Below, piece after piece: positions 55,794 through 60,396 of a DNA stretch of 64,000 bases. The position numbers and the translations under genes are program-made. The notes beneath the pieces are model-generated. The model made no database searches and was not told where the DNA came from. It saw only the letters and a program-made list of their open reading frames with translations. The stretch covers positions 3,038,001 to 3,102,000 of the forward strand of contig NC_088855.1 in assembly GCF_963853765.1 (NCBI RefSeq), in the 5' to 3' direction. The stretch comes from Magallana gigas. Lineage: Eukaryota. Each line of letters starts with the position of its first letter. The first letter of the stretch is position 1.

Positions 55794-57746
55794 TTACAAC
55801 TCCCCGTGTTTCTTGTTTCTTTTGTCCAGAAGATTTTGAACGTTGAGCGTATCACCGGAGTTTACAATCCAGCCTTTGTCTTCAACATTAAATCCACTGA
55901 AATTATCTGGCACTTCAAACACCGTGCTCCAACTCTGACCCTCGTCACTTATTATGTAATTTCCAGTTGCGTTCCATTCATTGGGTTTGTGAACAAATGG
56001 CGGGAAACGTACGGGCATTGCTGTTTGTCCGAAGAAAGAATTGGCCAGGGTGCAGTAGTTGATCTCACACTCATCCTCAATAGTTCCGATATGTTGACTG
56101 TATCCCCCGGGGCACGACTTGGACGTAAATGTCGGCGAGAAATACTGGTTTGAAAGGGGATTCCCCTCTTGGCAACTGAAGAAACCAGCGAATGGAATAG
56201 AGTATCTCTGCCCAAGTTCAAAGTCGTCAGACAGACAAACAAACATATCCGAGGTTATCATTGTGGGCTGGTAATAGGGCGGACAGCTCTGGGACTTGGT
56301 GACAGGGTTTGAGACGGTTTTGGTAAAAATTCCGCCAAAAAGAAACCCCGAATTTGGCGGGGCCTCGCCCGCATGTGCAGAGCACCAATACGTTGAATAC
56401 GACGCTTCGCCCCTATAAACGACATCATGGCACTTTTTCCAGAAAACCATGTAACTCTCACATTCTTGTCGAATTTCGGTCTTGGTTACATTACCCTGGT
56501 AAAGTAATGTCGATTTGTAACCTTCGCCACAGTTAAAATCCCCAGTTTTCTTGTTTTTTAAGGTTAGATCATCGCATAAGTTATCGGTGTCACCAGTGAA
56601 CACACAGTTTTGGAATAAACCGCCAATACTCATGTTTTTGCCTGGTGGTTGACAAGTTCCATCGTCAATATTAGCATTGAAGTTAAAGTTGGGCGAATTA
56701 ATGTCTGTGCAGCCCTTATACGTATTAAATCTGTAGTAAGCCGATATAGCAGCCTCAATAGAATCATGTGTTTGAGCTCGAATCGAGTCCGGCATTTCTG
56801 GGAACTGTTCTTTTGTAATTAAGAAGTGCAGCGGATCCCCCGACCTGTCGGTCGCCACCAAGTCGTTCCCTATCGTATCCACCCAGTCGTTGATACTGAA
56901 GTTAACAGGCTTGTAGGGCTGTCCACCGTACGTGAAGATCGTGGAATGGGTCTGACTGGTGGCATACTGCTGGGTCATTTGGTCAGTGACAGTTGACGTA
57001 TGGCCAATTCCTGCTCCTTTGCCAAAGAAAAAAATTCCCGCTATAGCAGAGATTTGCGATCTGGTTAGTTTAGAGCTTGTGGACAATGAATTGTTCAACT
57101 GGTCAACTTTGAAAATAGAAGCACCAACATCAATGCTGGTAATCACATGGGTGCCGAAGTCCCTGACTAGTAATTGACTTTCATACCTTGCGTACCTCTT
57201 CCTTCCGTTCAAATGGTGATTGGCGATAGACAGGATCTTGGAGCGGAATCCATGATCAAGAACAGGGTTTGGTTGGATTTTAGATGTGTAGCGAACATAT
57301 CGAGCCCCGGTTCTCTGAGTAAACGAGTTGTCGTTAACCTGGTTACTCTTTACCTCGTCGTATTCCGATGAAAACTTCCCTCCGATTGAAAACAATCCAG
57401 CCACCTTTGCTTGACCTCCAACGTTGATTGTTTTTGATGTGGCTGAAGTAAAATTCATCCAATGGTCAATTCGCTCAGAGTAAATTTTGACTTGACTGGC
57501 TTTTTCGGGAACAACGAAAACATTGTCTGGGATAAAATATCGGCCATCCTCAGTCATTCCACAGTCCGAATAATTGTAAAAGACGATTCTAGCGCGGTCT
57601 TCGTTTTTCAAGTTGTCCCACCCTCCTCCCGGTAAAACTTCGAATACCATCACATCCGGGCTAGCTCTCCGGCAGTCTGAAGGAGAAGTCATACATTGCG
57701 GCAATAATAGTATTGCTACGGACACAACAACGAAACGTCCCGCCAT
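55794..57746 (-). CDS. MPEG1: Perforin-2/MPEG1-like MACPF protein, TM-less paralogue, 650 aa, intronless
   Basis: Signal peptide MAGRFVVVSVAILLLPQCMTS, FEVLPGGGWDNLKN, MACPF signature LLVRDFGTHVITSIDVGA, DRSGDPL, EGF-like GCTDINSPNFNFNANIDDGTC and a Cys-rich P2 domain. Ends LLDKRNKKHGEL* with no hydrophobic helix. Confidence 0.93.
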   Translation of the reverse strand: MAGRFVVVSVAILLLPQCMTSPSDCRRASPDVMVFEVLPGGGWDNLKNEDRARIVFYNYSDCGMTEDGRYFIPDNVFVVPEKASQVKIYSERIDHWMNFTSATSKTINVGGQAKVAGLFSIGGKFSSEYDEVKSNQVNDNSFTQRTGARYVRYTSKIQPNPVLDHGFRSKILSIANHHLNGRKRYARYESQLLVRDFGTHVITSIDVGASIFKVDQLNNSLSTSSKLTRSQISAIAGIFFFGKGAGIGHTSTVTDQMTQQYATSQTHSTIFTYGGQPYKPVNFSINDWVDTIGNDLVATDRSGDPLHFLITKEQFPEMPDSIRAQTHDSIEAAISAYYRFNTYKGCTDINSPNFNFNANIDDGTCQPPGKNMSIGGLFQNCVFTGDTDNLCDDLTLKNKKTGDFNCGEGYKSTLLYQGNVTKTEIRQECESYMVFWKKCHDVVYRGEASYSTYWCSAHAGEAPPNSGFLFGGIFTKTVSNPVTKSQSCPPYYQPTMITSDMFVCLSDDFELGQRYSIPFAGFFSCQEGNPLSNQYFSPTFTSKSCPGGYSQHIGTIEDECEINYCTLANSFFGQTAMPVRFPPFVHKPNEWNATGNYIISDEGQSWSTVFEVPDNFSGFNVEDKGWIVNSGDTLNVQNLLDKRNKKHGEL

Positions 57747-58203: not shown

Positions 58204-60396
58204 ATGGCGAGCACAAGCAGCTTCGTGTTGGCAGCTGTCGTATTGTTGAATTCGGTGGCATGGGGCTTGGAAGACACATCGAAGTGCCAATTACCAAGGA
58301 ATGCGTCTATTTTCGGTTTCGAGGTTCTGCCCGGGGACGGATGGGATAACCTTAAAAACGAAATCCGCGGTCGGGTTATCCTCCGCAATTACAGCTTATG
58401 TCAAATGACAGAAGATGGCCAGTATCTGATACCAAACGGAGTATTCGCTATTCCCGTCAAGTCCAGTCAAGTCGAACTCTACTCCCAGCTGATTAACAAC
58501 TGGATGAATTATTCTTCTGACACGGCTGCCAGCATTAACTTAGACGGCTCCATTTCCATTGATGACCTTCCAATAAACGGGAAATTTTCGTTAGATTTCC
58601 AGGGGGTCAAGGGTCACCAAGTGAACGACGATTCTGTGACAATGAAAGTAAAAGCAAGGTATGTGCAATATTCAGCAAAATTGCAGCCTATAATGTCTCT
58701 GGATCCGTCATTCATGGCTCGCGTCTCCAGCATTGCACAACATATACAGTTCAATAGAACTGCCTCTGCCAAATATGAGAGCCAGCTCCTTGTGAGGGAT
58801 TTTGGAACGCACGTTGTCACCAGCATAGACGCGGGTGCTGCGATAGTTAAACTTGACCACATTAATAGAAGTTTACTAAAGGATTCTTCCATCAATCGGT
58901 ACCAGCTATCTTTAGTTGCGAGCTCCGATCTTTTCCATGCTGGTGGAACTGGGACGGTTGATAGTACAACGATGCAGAAATACTACAGCGCTCTCACGCA
59001 TTCCTCCGTTAACACGTATGGTGGACCTATCTACAAACCGGCCAATTTCAGCATCAACGACTGGGTGGATGGAATCCAAGACAACCTTGTAGCAGTTGAC
59101 CGGTCTGGAGATCCACTTTCCTTTTTTATTCAGCCCAAACTCTTCCCAAACATCCCTGTGTCAACTGTTTATAAACTAGCTTCTCAAATTGACCAAGCAA
59201 TCAAGGCTTATTACAAGTACAACACTCACAAAGGCTGCACGGACCGTGACTCGCCTAATTTTAATTACTATGCCAATGTAGACGATGGCTCTTGTTCTCA
59301 CAACATTACCGGGATGGTTTTTGGTGGCATGTTTCAGCATTGCAACGAGTCAGGTGAAATCCCTAACGTATGTCAAAACTTAGAAAGCAAGAACCCCTTA
59401 ACAGGGGATTTTTCTTGTCCTGAAGGATTTGATATTACTCCTCTGTTCACTGACCATGAAAGTTTTACTCAAACAAGAAAGGTGTGTTCGAAATATATGG
59501 TTTTCTGGTCGAAATGCCACGAAGAAACGGTCTATGGTTCAGCTACATTTACATCTTACTGGTGTGCAGCAAAAGGACAGTTTGCAGTTCCAACTGGATT
59601 CCTATTTGGAGGCATCTTTTCAGACACCATCTCTAATTCAGTTACACAGCAGAAAAATTGTCCACCATACTTCTACCCAATCAAGACAGCAAAAGACTTA
59701 AGCGTCTGTGTGACAAATGATTTTGAGAACGGAGAGAAATATTCTATGCCTTTCGCTGGTTTTTACAGTTGTCAAAACGGAAATCCAGTCACAAATGGAC
59801 TGGATACGACTCTTAACACCATTAAATCGTGTCCCCCTGGATACAGCCAGCATCTAGCTACAACAGAGAACGAGTGCGACCTGATGTACTGTACCAGGCC
59901 ACTTACAATTCCTGCTAGTCCCTATGTTTCGGTCCACAGACCCCCATTCATGAGACCACCTCTGGAAACAAACCAAACTTCCGATTTCCTGGTGAGCGAT
60001 GACGGACAAGAATGGACTCAGCTCTACTCCGTGGACTCAACGTTTAACGGATTTAACGGGACAGTCGCTGGGTGGATTGTCAACGACGGCACAAACCTAA
60101 ACATGGAATCGCTGCTGGCGTCTAAACACGCTAGCTCCCAAAACACAGACGATAAAACTGCATCCTCAGACAACGGAAACTTCTTTGGCAAAGATGACCC
60201 TATGGCAACCGGAAAGACTGTTGATTTTCATGGTGTTTCTGCAAGTCACGTCTCGTTTATCGTCGGTTCCTCTGTCGCTGCCACGCTTTTCTGCGTTTTA
60301 TTCACCACGATTTTGTTGGTGATTTTCCTGCGCAGCAAGCGCGGAAACCGCTACCAACGACTGGAAGAAGGCGTCCAGCGTCCAAATAAACATTAA
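58204..60396 (+). CDS. MPEG1: Perforin-2/MPEG1, canonical membrane-anchored paralogue, 730 aa from the ATG at 58204, intronless
   Basis: Signal peptide MASTSSFVLAAVVLLNSVAWG, FEVLPGDGWDNLKN, LLVRDFGTHVVTSIDAGA, EGF-like and P2 domains, TM helix VSFIVGSSVAATLFCVLFTTILLVIFL and tail RSKRGNRYQRLEEG. The ORF track starts 30 nt upstream at a non-ATG codon. Confidence 0.95.
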   Translation: MASTSSFVLAAVVLLNSVAWGLEDTSKCQLPRNASIFGFEVLPGDGWDNLKNEIRGRVILRNYSLCQMTEDGQYLIPNGVFAIPVKSSQVELYSQLINNWMNYSSDTAASINLDGSISIDDLPINGKFSLDFQGVKGHQVNDDSVTMKVKARYVQYSAKLQPIMSLDPSFMARVSSIAQHIQFNRTASAKYESQLLVRDFGTHVVTSIDAGAAIVKLDHINRSLLKDSSINRYQLSLVASSDLFHAGGTGTVDSTTMQKYYSALTHSSVNTYGGPIYKPANFSINDWVDGIQDNLVAVDRSGDPLSFFIQPKLFPNIPVSTVYKLASQIDQAIKAYYKYNTHKGCTDRDSPNFNYYANVDDGSCSHNITGMVFGGMFQHCNESGEIPNVCQNLESKNPLTGDFSCPEGFDITPLFTDHESFTQTRKVCSKYMVFWSKCHEETVYGSATFTSYWCAAKGQFAVPTGFLFGGIFSDTISNSVTQQKNCPPYFYPIKTAKDLSVCVTNDFENGEKYSMPFAGFYSCQNGNPVTNGLDTTLNTIKSCPPGYSQHLATTENECDLMYCTRPLTIPASPYVSVHRPPFMRPPLETNQTSDFLVSDDGQEWTQLYSVDSTFNGFNGTVAGWIVNDGTNLNMESLLASKHASSQNTDDKTASSDNGNFFGKDDPMATGKTVDFHGVSASHVSFIVGSSVAATLFCVLFTTILLVIFLRSKRGNRYQRLEEGVQRPNKH

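What the first reader, a model, noticed from the sequence alone, without database searches (positions are those of the whole stretch)
55794..60396. Head-to-head perforin-2 pair: a membrane-anchored and a soluble MPEG1 sharing a 457-bp intergenic region
Seen: two intronless, clearly diverged MPEG1 paralogues with ATGs at 57746 (-) and 58204 (+). Both keep signal peptide, MACPF, EGF-like and P2 domains. One has stalk, TM helix and tail; the other stops right after the GWIVN..LN..LL stalk. Established: perforin-2 is normally a type I membrane protein whose ectodomain is released to form acid-triggered pores, and mammals make a TM-less form by alternative splicing. Inference: here the two forms are hard-wired as separate genes under one bidirectional promoter. 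That would be a two-component pore-forming immune module, either co-induced with compartment division of labour or hetero-oligomerising.
Basis: partly seen in the sequence, partly recalled or inferred. Interest (0 to 1): 0.85.

Follow-up and report, generated by a model that had tools for sequence, protein, structure and literature searches.

The report
Oyster perforin-2 pair: anchored plus soluble
An oyster carries two back-to-back immune pore-forming (perforin-2/MPEG1) genes, one membrane-anchored and one that lost its anchor and ends in an ER-retrieval-like signal. Both are transcribed, and the pairing is conserved across oysters, so the two forms can be compared directly in experiments.

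Summary
Two intact, intronless MPEG1/perforin-2 genes lie head to head with 457 bp between their ATGs. The short gene is 55794-57746 (-), 650 aa. The long gene is 58204-60396 (+), 730 aa. They are 48% identical.

The long one has a TM helix and a YQRL sorting motif. The short one is a complete ectodomain with no TM and ends in HGEL.

Stranded poly(A) RNA shows both genes transcribed and unspliced, from start regions about 50-180 bp apart. The short mRNA ends about 157 nt after its stop, against a convergent PhyH-like gene. A downstream TM exon is therefore excluded.

The same pair occurs in C. virginica, O. edulis and two Saccostrea species. All short copies stop at the same column, with [HR]-x-[ED]-L termini. 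Pinctada has the head-to-head pair with both copies anchored, and Mytilus has them in tandem. The duplication is therefore ancient, and the TM was lost once on the oyster stem. Both copies are under strong purifying selection.

The genes very probably equal CgMACPF-2 and CgMACPF-5 of Liu et al. 2026. That paper notes the missing TM but not the pairing, its history or the terminus.

Co-regulation is only partly supported. Hetero-oligomerisation remains untested.

The parts
55794..57746 (-). CDS of the TM-less MPEG1 paralogue (clade A, 650 aa plus stop). It is a complete perforin-2 ectodomain and very probably equals CgMACPF-2.
   Evidence: ORF; Pfam MACPF; PDB match 25-606; model and Foldseek; no TM; dN 0.08-0.13 against saturated dS; length and locus match to Liu et al. 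2026
55797..55808 (-). Codons for the C-terminal HGEL, a KDEL-like (HXEL-type) putative ER-retrieval signal, followed by the stop at 55794-55796.
   Evidence: Translation check. Orthologues end RGEL, HREL, HSDL and HGDL at the same column. The last 8 residues are invariant in 15 alleles with 54 variable sites elsewhere. It fits the position rules of Raykhel 2007. The last three residues have pLDDT below 50, which suggests a flexible, exposed end.
57684..57746 (-). Signal-peptide-like hydrophobic N-terminus of the short copy (about residues 1-21).
   Evidence: Hydropathy. SMART predicts a signal peptide for CgMACPF-2 in PMC13090629.
55636..55793 (-). 3'UTR of the short copy. AATAAATAAA lies at 55649-55658, and RNA contigs end at 55634-55638.
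   Evidence: Five RNA contigs end at 55634-55638; poly(A) signal; stranded read depth stops in the bin 55646-55844
57747..58203 (.). The 457-bp spacer, holding both 5'UTRs and the divergent core promoters. Short-gene RNA 5' ends lie near 57830-57904 and long-gene RNA 5' ends near 57955-58005.
   Evidence: Stranded raw reads show minus-strand RNA absent above 57834. Plus-strand RNA is present from within 57835-58033 and covers 58027. RNA contig 5' ends lie at 57782-57904 (short) and 57955 and 57970 (long).
57975..57981 (+). TATAAAA box about 25-30 bp upstream of the 5' edge of long-gene coverage in the raw reads.
   Evidence: Sequence; motif scan; read depth. Two RNA contigs start upstream of it (57955, 57970), so it need not be the only start.
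58082..58129 (.). The only clearly conserved block of the spacer in four oysters. It lies inside the long gene's 5'UTR.
   Evidence: Alignment A2, columns 78-125. Its function was not tested.
58204..60396 (+). CDS of the membrane-anchored MPEG1 paralogue (clade B, 730 aa plus stop), very probably CgMACPF-5.
   Evidence: ORF; Pfam; tree; dN 0.12-0.16 against saturated dS; Liu et al. 2026
60274..60330 (+). Type I transmembrane helix of the long copy (residues 691-709).
   Evidence: Hydropathy 2.79
60352..60363 (+). YQRL, a YxxPhi-type sorting motif in the 21-residue cytosolic tail, 7 residues after the TM helix.
   Evidence: Translation. A YxxPhi motif is present in 13 of 14 clade-B tails.
60397..60504 (+). 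3'UTR of the long copy, with RNA contig ends at 60474-60504. It lies in a 97-bp x 2.8 tandem repeat (60420-60696).
55445..55640 (+). Last exon of the convergent PhyH-like neighbour. Its 3' end abuts or overlaps the short copy's 3' end, which leaves no room for a downstream TM exon.
   Evidence: GT..AG joint 55080->55445 and plus-strand RNA up to about 55645. RNA contig L013 joins the short mRNA to the spliced PhyH cDNA. The same neighbour is present in four other oysters.

Best explanation
This is a conserved, expressed, divergently transcribed pair of ancient MPEG1/perforin-2 paralogues in an oyster, very probably Crassostrea (Magallana) gigas.

Clade B, the long gene, is a canonical perforin-2. 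It has a signal peptide, an ectodomain, a type I TM helix and a short cytosolic tail with a YxxPhi motif (YQRL). That motif would send it to endosomes and phagosomes (inferred).

Clade A, the short gene, lost its TM helix and tail once, on the stem of the oyster family. It encodes the whole ectodomain as a soluble luminal protein. Its conserved [HR]-x-[ED]-L terminus most likely makes it a KDEL-receptor client (inferred). It would then be held in, or cycled through, the ER and early Golgi at neutral pH rather than constitutively secreted.

Shown here: the gene structures, expression of both genes, unspliced transcripts, start regions 50-180 bp apart, conservation of the pair, the phylogeny and purifying selection.

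Inferred: each protein forms pores on its own, and the two divide labour by compartment. B would be membrane-tethered in the endolysosomal route. A would be a soluble ER-retrievable pool that needs no proteolytic shedding. The compact divergent promoter would give broadly shared but not identical regulation.
For: Structure.

Expression and transcript ends: stranded poly(A) reads show both genes in all three runs. Mean depths, which I averaged from the bins, are about 3.0 (short) and 1.8 (long), 11.2 and 11.4, and 1.8 and 0.9. There are no joints inside either gene. RNA contigs are collinear with the genome.

Conservation: the head-to-head pair and the PhyH neighbour occur in S. echinata, C. 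virginica, O. edulis and S. cucullata, with spacers of 446, 406, 424 and 454 bp. Pinctada has the head-to-head pair with both copies anchored. Mytilus and a mytilid-like contig have A and B in tandem.

Tree: clade A has support 99/98, clade B 100/99 and A+B 100/99. The TM is absent only in the oyster part of A.

Selection: dN is 0.08-0.13 for the short copy and 0.12-0.16 for the long copy, with dS saturated above 1.2.

Terminus: five orthologues stop at the same column with HGEL, RGEL, HREL, HSDL or HGDL. Alleles are invariant there. Raykhel 2007 found that position -4 accepts K/R/H, -3 accepts anything but P, -2 prefers E with D weaker, and -1 is L. One receptor prefers HXEL.

Tails: clade B carries YxxPhi in 13 of 14 sequences, and no TM-bearing clade-A tail has a spaced one.

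Literature: CgMACPF-2 has a signal peptide only, is highly expressed in haemocytes and is induced by glucan and peptidoglycan. CgMACPF-5 is induced by LPS. Both share a D-larva-to-juvenile profile.
Against: No localisation, secretion or pore assay exists for either protein. HGEL itself was not among the variants tested by Raykhel 2007 (0 occurrences). D at position -2 (Saccostrea) is a weaker signal there. The KDEL-receptor specificity of molluscs is unknown. The last 12 residues are conserved as a whole (LLDxRN...), so conservation of the last four is not uniquely strong. YxxPhi is a short motif read from sequence only. TM-less MPEG1-like proteins without any KDEL-like end exist elsewhere, so loss of the anchor does not by itself imply ER retrieval. 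The identification with CgMACPF-2 and CgMACPF-5 rests on lengths, chromosome and adjacent locus numbers, not on a sequence comparison.
Confidence: 0.6

Rival explanations
1. Two-component pore. The soluble A and the anchored B co-assemble into mixed rings in the ER or on vesicle membranes. B would then supply anchoring and sorting, and A would supply extra or specialised subunits. The KDEL-like end would hold unpaired A back until B is made.
For: A and B have stayed adjacent since before oysters, pearl oysters and mussels diverged. The whole A clade lacks a spaced YxxPhi motif, so A may depend on another protein for post-ER sorting. The two share a developmental profile and co-vary in three runs. 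The oligomerisation-relevant ectodomain is complete in both.
Against: There is no direct evidence. The complex prediction gave no verdict. Clade B has a clade-wide 4-5 residue deletion in the TMH2 region relative to A and to 87 of the 100 aligned homologues, so the hairpins would differ in length. Basal level in haemocytes and PAMP induction differ between the two genes. Identity is only 48%.
Confidence: 0.15
2. Plain humoral effector. The short copy is constitutively secreted into haemolymph or mucus, and the [HR]-x-[ED]-L end is not a working retrieval signal.
For: It has a signal peptide and no TM. Other TM-less MPEG1-like proteins exist without a KDEL-like end. Human MPEG1b is secreted. 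D at position -2, and motifs outside the PROSITE pattern, can be weak.
Against: The stop column and the -4, -2 and -1 positions are kept in five species and in all sampled alleles, while -3 varies. This is the pattern expected for a KDEL-receptor ligand. My rough estimate is that a random terminus fits this pattern about 2 times in 1000.
Confidence: 0.2
3. A decaying truncated copy, or a mis-called gene whose TM exon lies downstream.
For: Truncated and interrupted MPEG1-like fragments exist elsewhere in this genome.
Against: The 650-aa ORF is intact. dN is lower than in the partner. The protein has 217 cluster members in public assemblies. It is transcribed and polyadenylated 157 nt after the stop, with no joints. 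The downstream space is occupied by a convergent gene. The stop position is conserved in five species.
Confidence: 0.02

Closest known systems
Mammalian MPEG1 / perforin-2 (solved pre-pores 6U23, 6U2K, 6SB3)
   Same: Both have a signal peptide, a MACPF domain, a Cys-rich linker, a P2/MABP domain and a C-terminal stalk, and both come from intronless genes. Sequence identity is 36-39% over about 600 residues, and the fold match has TM 0.70-0.83. The long copy also has the type I TM helix and a short tail.
   Different: The short copy has no TM helix or tail and ends in HGEL. The long copy's tail carries YQRL. I did not compare it with the mammalian lysine-rich ubiquitylated tail.
Human MPEG1b / PRF2b, the secreted splice isoform
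   Same: It is a TM-less form of perforin-2 made alongside the anchored form (PMC7593815).
   Different: MPEG1b arises by alternative splicing and is truncated at K511 inside the MABP/P2 domain. The oyster form is a separate gene and keeps the whole ectodomain, including the stalk. It equals the recombinant soluble ectodomain that forms 16-mer pre-pores. It also carries a KDEL-like end.
CgMACPF-2 and CgMACPF-5 of Liu et al. 2026 (PMC13090629)
   Same: These are very probably the same two genes. They are 650 and 730 aa, lie on chromosome 3 and have adjacent locus numbers (CGI_10027826 and CGI_10027827). CgMACPF-2 is reported with a signal peptide only. The paper also gives expression data.
   Different: The paper does not mention the head-to-head arrangement, the shared spacer, orthologues, the age of the duplication, the single TM loss, the terminal motif or the YxxPhi difference.
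Soluble ER proteins with non-canonical KDEL-like ends: carboxylesterases (HXEL), SUMF2 (PGEL), MANF/ARMET (RTDL) and ERp57 (QEDL)
   Same: These are signal-peptide proteins whose last four residues fit [basic or other]-x-[E/D]-L and that were found in the ER (PMC2140024).
   Different: None of them is a pore-forming protein. Retrieval of the oyster protein is untested.
TM-less MPEG1-like proteins among the homologues (P0091, P0100, P0102, P0112; the related P0092 is labelled Nematostella)
   Same: They are full-length MACPF+P2 proteins without a C-terminal TM helix.
   Different: They are an independent lineage and end in W-x-L-A-T-K-x, which is not KDEL-like. Whether they have partners is unknown.

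Membership tests
MPEG1 / perforin-2 (MACPF superfamily) | MACPF domain | tested here: met
   PF01823 matches at 68 and 77 bits against a cut-off of 21.5, covering the full profile in both proteins.
MPEG1 / perforin-2 (MACPF superfamily) | P2/MABP domain and a full ectodomain like the solved MPEG1 structures | tested here: met
   For the short copy, phmmer gives E 1e-145 over residues 25-606, and Foldseek gives TMt 0.79-0.83 to pre-pores and 0.87 to the P2 crystal structure. The long copy aligns to the short one end to end at 48% identity, with the invariant cysteines kept. It was not folded.
MPEG1 / perforin-2 (MACPF superfamily) | N-terminal signal peptide | tested here: met
   Both have hydrophobic N-termini, and SMART predictions are reported in PMC13090629. 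No dedicated signal-peptide predictor was run here.
MPEG1 / perforin-2 (MACPF superfamily) | Type I TM helix plus a short cytosolic tail | tested here: not met
   Met by the long copy (residues 691-709 plus a 21-residue tail). Not met by the short copy or its four orthologues. The short copy is a family member by descent but departs from the canonical architecture.
MPEG1 / perforin-2 (MACPF superfamily) | Acid-triggered oligomeric pore formation and bactericidal activity | not testable with these tools
   The MACPF signature (F/Y-G-T-H...G) and the TMH regions are kept. No assay was possible.
KDEL-receptor clients (soluble ER-retrieved proteins) | A soluble secretory-pathway protein whose last four residues fit the experimentally defined code | tested here: met
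   HGEL, RGEL, HREL, HSDL and HGDL were checked against the position rules in PMC2140024. HGEL itself was not among the variants tested there.
KDEL-receptor clients (soluble ER-retrieved proteins) | ER localisation that depends on the terminal motif | not testable with these tools
   There are no localisation data. Support is indirect: the terminus is conserved across species and alleles and is flexible in the model.
Bidirectional (divergent) promoter gene pair | Opposite-strand genes with start sites less than 1 kb apart and no intervening gene | tested here: met
   Stranded reads and RNA contig ends place the 5' ends about 50-180 bp apart inside the 457-bp spacer.
Bidirectional (divergent) promoter gene pair | Correlated expression | tested here: inconclusive
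   The two genes co-vary in three runs and share a developmental profile. In haemocytes they differ in basal level and PAMP response.
Two-component / hetero-oligomeric MACPF pore | Physical association of the two proteins | tested here: inconclusive
   The complex prediction returned no verdict. No experimental data exist.

The most novel reading that the evidence does not exclude
The A and B paralogues are an obligate partnership kept adjacent since the pteriomorph ancestor. In oysters, the soluble A subunit would be held in the ER by its KDEL-like end until it co-assembles with the YxxPhi-bearing B subunit. B would then carry mixed pre-pore rings to phagosomes. This would be a hetero-oligomeric perforin-2 with a built-in assembly checkpoint.
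Probability: 0.12. Interest if true: 0.85.

Novelty: new variant of a known kind. Interest (0 to 1): 0.55.

Why it matters
Perforin-2 is thought to need trafficking through its TM helix and tail, and then proteolytic release of its ectodomain, before it can attack engulfed microbes. How release, orientation and compartment control its activity is still debated.

Oysters offer a natural experiment on this question. One gene encodes the anchored form with an endolysosomal-type sorting motif. Its neighbour encodes exactly the ectodomain that structural biologists produce artificially. That neighbour has been kept under strong purifying selection across the oyster family and ends in an ER-retrieval-like signal.

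Three questions become directly testable:
- Does a soluble perforin-2 act alone, in another compartment, or in mixed rings with the anchored form?
- What does the TM anchor contribute?
- How does a compact divergent promoter split regulation between two immune effectors?

The result also adds an evolutionary frame that the recent C. gigas family catalogue lacks: an ancient A/B duplication and a single loss of the TM helix. This may help in reading oyster immune transcriptomes.

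Tried and rejected
1. Downstream TM exon. I translated 2.8 kb downstream of the short stop in three frames and ran tblastn with the long protein. Neither found a tail or TM homologue. RNA shows no joint or loose end there. Rejected.

2. Pseudogene or silent copy. Rejected.

3. Pairwise dN/dS. dS was saturated in 9 of 12 pairs, so I report only dN and three omega values (0.05-0.10).

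4. Promoter footprinting. The spacer aligns poorly among four oysters except for one block, 58082-58129, inside the long 5'UTR. A simple motif scan found no kappaB, AP-1, ISRE or CRE site in the window spacer. The forkhead and GATA matches are expected in AT-rich DNA, and I do not interpret them.

5. Hetero-dimer prediction of the two MACPF domains. The tool's verdict was 'no answer', because one control scored too close. This is neither support nor evidence against.

6. A second homologue search with the Mytilus clade-A protein found no further clade-A clusters. The dilysine-like ends of mussel clade-A tails (KKLE and KKVE, but also RKIE and QKVE) therefore rest on four sequences only.

7. 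Literature searches for perforin-2 together with KDEL, and for the locus and accession numbers, found only Liu et al. 2026 as relevant.

8. One RNA-library contig, and several Logan contigs, span both genes and the spacer. I did not take these as evidence of a joint transcript. Unstranded assembly or DNA carry-over can explain them, and the stranded reads show no overlap.

9. The N run at 60805-61214 was left untouched. Read laying was given 5,951 letters.

Full report
**1. What is there**

The window holds two large ORFs at the stated place. The short one is 55794..57746 on the minus strand (650 aa). The long one is 58174..60396 on the plus strand, and its first ATG at 58204 gives 730 aa. The spacer between the two ATGs is 457 bp. 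The region is richer in G+C (0.44) than its surroundings (about 0.30-0.37).

The two proteins are 48% identical over 650 residues, and both pass Pfam MACPF over the whole profile. The short protein matches solved human and mouse MPEG1 ectodomains at E 1e-145 over residues 25-606. I built an AlphaFold2 model from a 100-sequence alignment (A3). It has pLDDT 83 and pTM 0.81. It superposes on MPEG1 pre-pore subunits (TM 0.70-0.83 over 605-638 columns) and on the P2-domain crystal structure (TMt 0.87).

Hydropathy finds a single C-terminal TM helix in the long protein (residues 691-709). The short protein has none after its signal-peptide-like N-terminus. The short protein ends 10 residues after the conserved stalk motif, with the sequence ...KKHGEL.

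**2. Which genome and which genes**

The assembly is 564 Mb in 29 pieces, and the window lies on piece 3. Liu et al. 2026 (PMC13090629) list ten MACPF genes in Crassostrea gigas. Among them are CgMACPF-2 (650 aa, LOC105320170, CGI_10027826) and CgMACPF-5 (730 aa, LOC105320232, CGI_10027827), both on chromosome 3. The paper states that CgMACPF-2 has a signal peptide but no TM helix. Lengths, adjacency and chromosome all fit, so these are very probably the same genes. I could not compare the sequences directly.

The paper does not discuss the arrangement, orthologues, the terminus or the evolution of the pair. A search for the locus and accession numbers found no other paper.

**3. Transcripts**

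I laid three stranded poly(A) RNA-seq runs, as raw reads, on 54850-60800.

- Minus-strand RNA covers about 55646-57834, which is the short gene.
- Plus-strand RNA covers from inside 57835-58033 to about 60620, which is the long gene. Reads span position 58027.
- No joint lies in either gene.
- The only joint is a GT..AG intron (55080->55445) of a plus-strand neighbour that ends near 55645.

RNA-derived Logan contigs are collinear with the genome. Short-gene contigs have 5' ends at 57782-57904. Five of them have 3' ends at 55634-55638, 11-20 nt after AATAAATAAA. Long-gene contigs begin at 57955 and 57970 and end at 60474-60504. One contig (L013) joins the short mRNA to the fully spliced cDNA of the neighbouring PhyH-like gene, so the two 3' ends abut or overlap tail to tail.

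Three conclusions follow.

- Both genes are single-exon and expressed.
- The start regions lie roughly 50-180 bp apart, and a TATAAAA box at 57975-57981 faces the long gene.
- The short transcript is polyadenylated 157 nt after its stop, with no room and no evidence for a downstream TM exon.

**4. Co-regulation**

I averaged the depth bins for each gene. Mean depths, short against long, are about 3.0 and 1.8, 11.2 and 11.4, and 1.8 and 0.9 in the three runs. The genes rise and fall together, but n = 3.

Liu et al. place CgMACPF-2 and CgMACPF-5 in one developmental group, high from D-larva to juvenile, and report both as broadly expressed in tissues. In haemocytes, however, CgMACPF-2 has a high basal level and is induced by glucan and peptidoglycan. 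CgMACPF-5 is low and is induced by LPS. The promoter region is physically shared, but the regulation is similar rather than identical.

**5. Conservation and history**

The nearest relatives of the short protein are 654-aa proteins of C. virginica (XP_022339738), O. edulis (XP_048751219), S. echinata and S. cucullata, at 78-81% identity. In each of these genomes the short gene lies head to head with a 723-727-aa orthologue of the long gene. The spacers are 406, 424, 446 and 454 bp. The same PhyH-like gene converges on the short copy in each.

Pinctada imbricata has a head-to-head pair with an 820-bp spacer, but both members carry a TM helix. Mytilus galloprovincialis and a mytilid-like metagenomic contig carry the two types in tandem on one strand, 5.5-7.9 kb apart.

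A maximum-likelihood tree of 47 proteins (LG+C20+F+G4) resolves two sister clades.

| Clade | Members | Support (UFBoot/SH-aLRT) |
|---|---|---|
| A | oyster short copies, Pinctada 742 aa, mussel 717-721 aa | 99/98 |
| B | oyster long copies, Pinctada 727 aa, mussel 714-722 aa | 100/99 |
| A+B | both clades as sisters | 100/99 |

The A/B duplication and the adjacency of the two genes therefore predate the split of mussels, pearl oysters and true oysters. From general knowledge of bivalve history that is hundreds of millions of years, but I did not compute dates here. The TM helix was lost once, on the oyster stem of clade A.

Both oyster clades are under strong purifying selection. dN is 0.08-0.13 for A and 0.12-0.16 for B, and dS is saturated (above 1.2, omega about 0.05-0.10 where it can be calculated). 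The anchorless copy evolves more slowly than its partner.

**6. The two C-termini**

All five short orthologues stop at the same alignment column. They end in HGEL, RGEL, HREL, HSDL or HGDL. Among 15 alleles of the window species, which have 54 variable sites, none varies in the last eight residues. The same holds for 14 C. virginica alleles.

Raykhel et al. 2007 tested 152 KDEL variants in a reporter. Their findings by position were:

- Position -4 accepts K, R or H.
- Position -3 accepts every residue except proline. PGEL of SUMF2 is ER-located.
- Position -2 strongly prefers E, and D works more weakly. RTDL, KEDL and QEDL proteins are in the ER.
- Position -1 is L.
- One of the three human receptors prefers HXEL.

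The oyster pattern is basic at -4, free at -3, acidic at -2 and L at -1. That is the pattern of constraint expected for a KDEL-receptor ligand. In the model the last three residues are of low confidence, which suggests they are flexible and exposed. The conservation data here add to that note.

By contrast, 13 of 14 clade-B tails carry a YxxPhi motif within their 16-28-residue cytosolic tails. It starts 7 residues after the predicted helix in the oyster copies. The window's version is YQRL. A third bivalve MPEG1 clade carries one too. TM-bearing clade-A proteins have tails of only about 6-16 residues and no spaced YxxPhi. Two of the four mussel tails end in KKxx.

From established cell biology, which I recall rather than tested, YxxPhi motifs bind AP adaptor complexes for endolysosomal sorting, and C-terminal KKxx retrieves type I membrane proteins to the ER. 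The inference is that clade B is the endosome- or phagosome-directed form. Clade A had already given up that signal before oysters deleted its anchor.

**7. Most likely mechanism**

B behaves like canonical perforin-2.

A is a soluble, complete, presumably pore-competent ectodomain. It would be kept in or cycled through the ER and cis-Golgi, where neutral pH would keep an acid-triggered pore former quiescent. It would be available without proteolytic shedding.

How A reaches its target is unknown. Possible routes are leak or saturation of retrieval, regulated release, contribution of ER membrane to phagosomes, or escort by B.

Clade B shares a 4-5-residue deletion in the TMH2 region relative to A and to 87 of the 100 aligned homologues. 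That deletion makes identical hairpin geometry in mixed rings less obvious, but it does not exclude mixing.

**8. Comparison with what is known**

The mammalian TM-less isoform MPEG1b is a splice product truncated at K511 inside the MABP/P2 domain, and it is secreted (PMC7593815). The oyster protein is a separate gene with the whole ectodomain and a retrieval-like end, so the analogy is loose.

TM-less MPEG1-like proteins occur in another lineage among the homologues, one of them labelled Nematostella. They do not have a KDEL-like end.

No paper in the library links perforin-2 with a KDEL-type signal, or describes the paired arrangement.

**9. Verdict**

The genes themselves are annotated and catalogued. 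Five points are new:

- the conserved divergent pairing;
- its deep A/B origin;
- the single TM loss;
- the contrast between a conserved KDEL-like terminus and a YxxPhi tail;
- the mapped transcript ends.

I rate this a new variant of a known kind and of moderate interest. The hetero-oligomer idea remains open: the single complex prediction gave no verdict.

Noticed in passing
window 53000-55743, 26186-28914 and 32603-35329: The PhyH-like gene region downstream of the short MPEG1 is present three times in the window, at 96.2% identity. The duplication boundary (55743) lies inside the short gene's 3'UTR, so about 108 nt of that UTR is copied at 28807-28914 and 35222-35329. No MPEG1 coding remnant lies in the copies.
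   Followed up: partly
window 60420-60696: A 97-bp x 2.8 tandem repeat (91% matches) lies directly after the long gene's stop and holds its poly(A) region. The RNA contig ends at 60474-60504 fall inside it.
   Followed up: partly
window 55445-55645 (+) against 55636-55793 (-): The short MPEG1 and the convergent PhyH-like gene have abutting or overlapping 3' ends. One RNA contig (L013) joins the two mRNAs tail to tail.
   Followed up: partly
window 58082-58129: This is the only well-conserved block of the spacer among four oysters, and it lies in the long gene's 5'UTR rather than between the start sites. It includes a CACGTG in the window and a TGTTTAC-like motif in the other species. Its function is unknown.
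   Followed up: no
long protein residues about 240-260 (window about 58920-58985): All clade-B proteins (oyster, Pinctada, mussel) share a 4-5-residue deletion in the TMH2 region. Clade A and 87 of the 100 aligned homologues keep the longer form.
   Followed up: no
P0009, P0010 (and P0008, P0011): mussel-type clade-A proteins: TM-bearing clade-A proteins of mussels have very short tails ending in KKLE, KKVE, RKIE or QKVE. The first two are canonical dilysine ER-retrieval ends. This hints that clade A may be ER-directed beyond oysters, but it rests on only four sequences.
   Followed up: partly
G000 C4:17.29-17.74 Mb, C4:51.2-51.8 Mb and C3:23.08 Mb: The genome has three more full-length MPEG1-like ORFs. 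It also has one shorter ORF (582 aa, matching residues 32-533) and several fragments, at least two of them with internal stops. Most cluster on piece 4.
   Followed up: no
window 60805-61214: A 410-base N run (assembly gap or masked stretch) lies 0.4 kb after the long gene.
   Followed up: no
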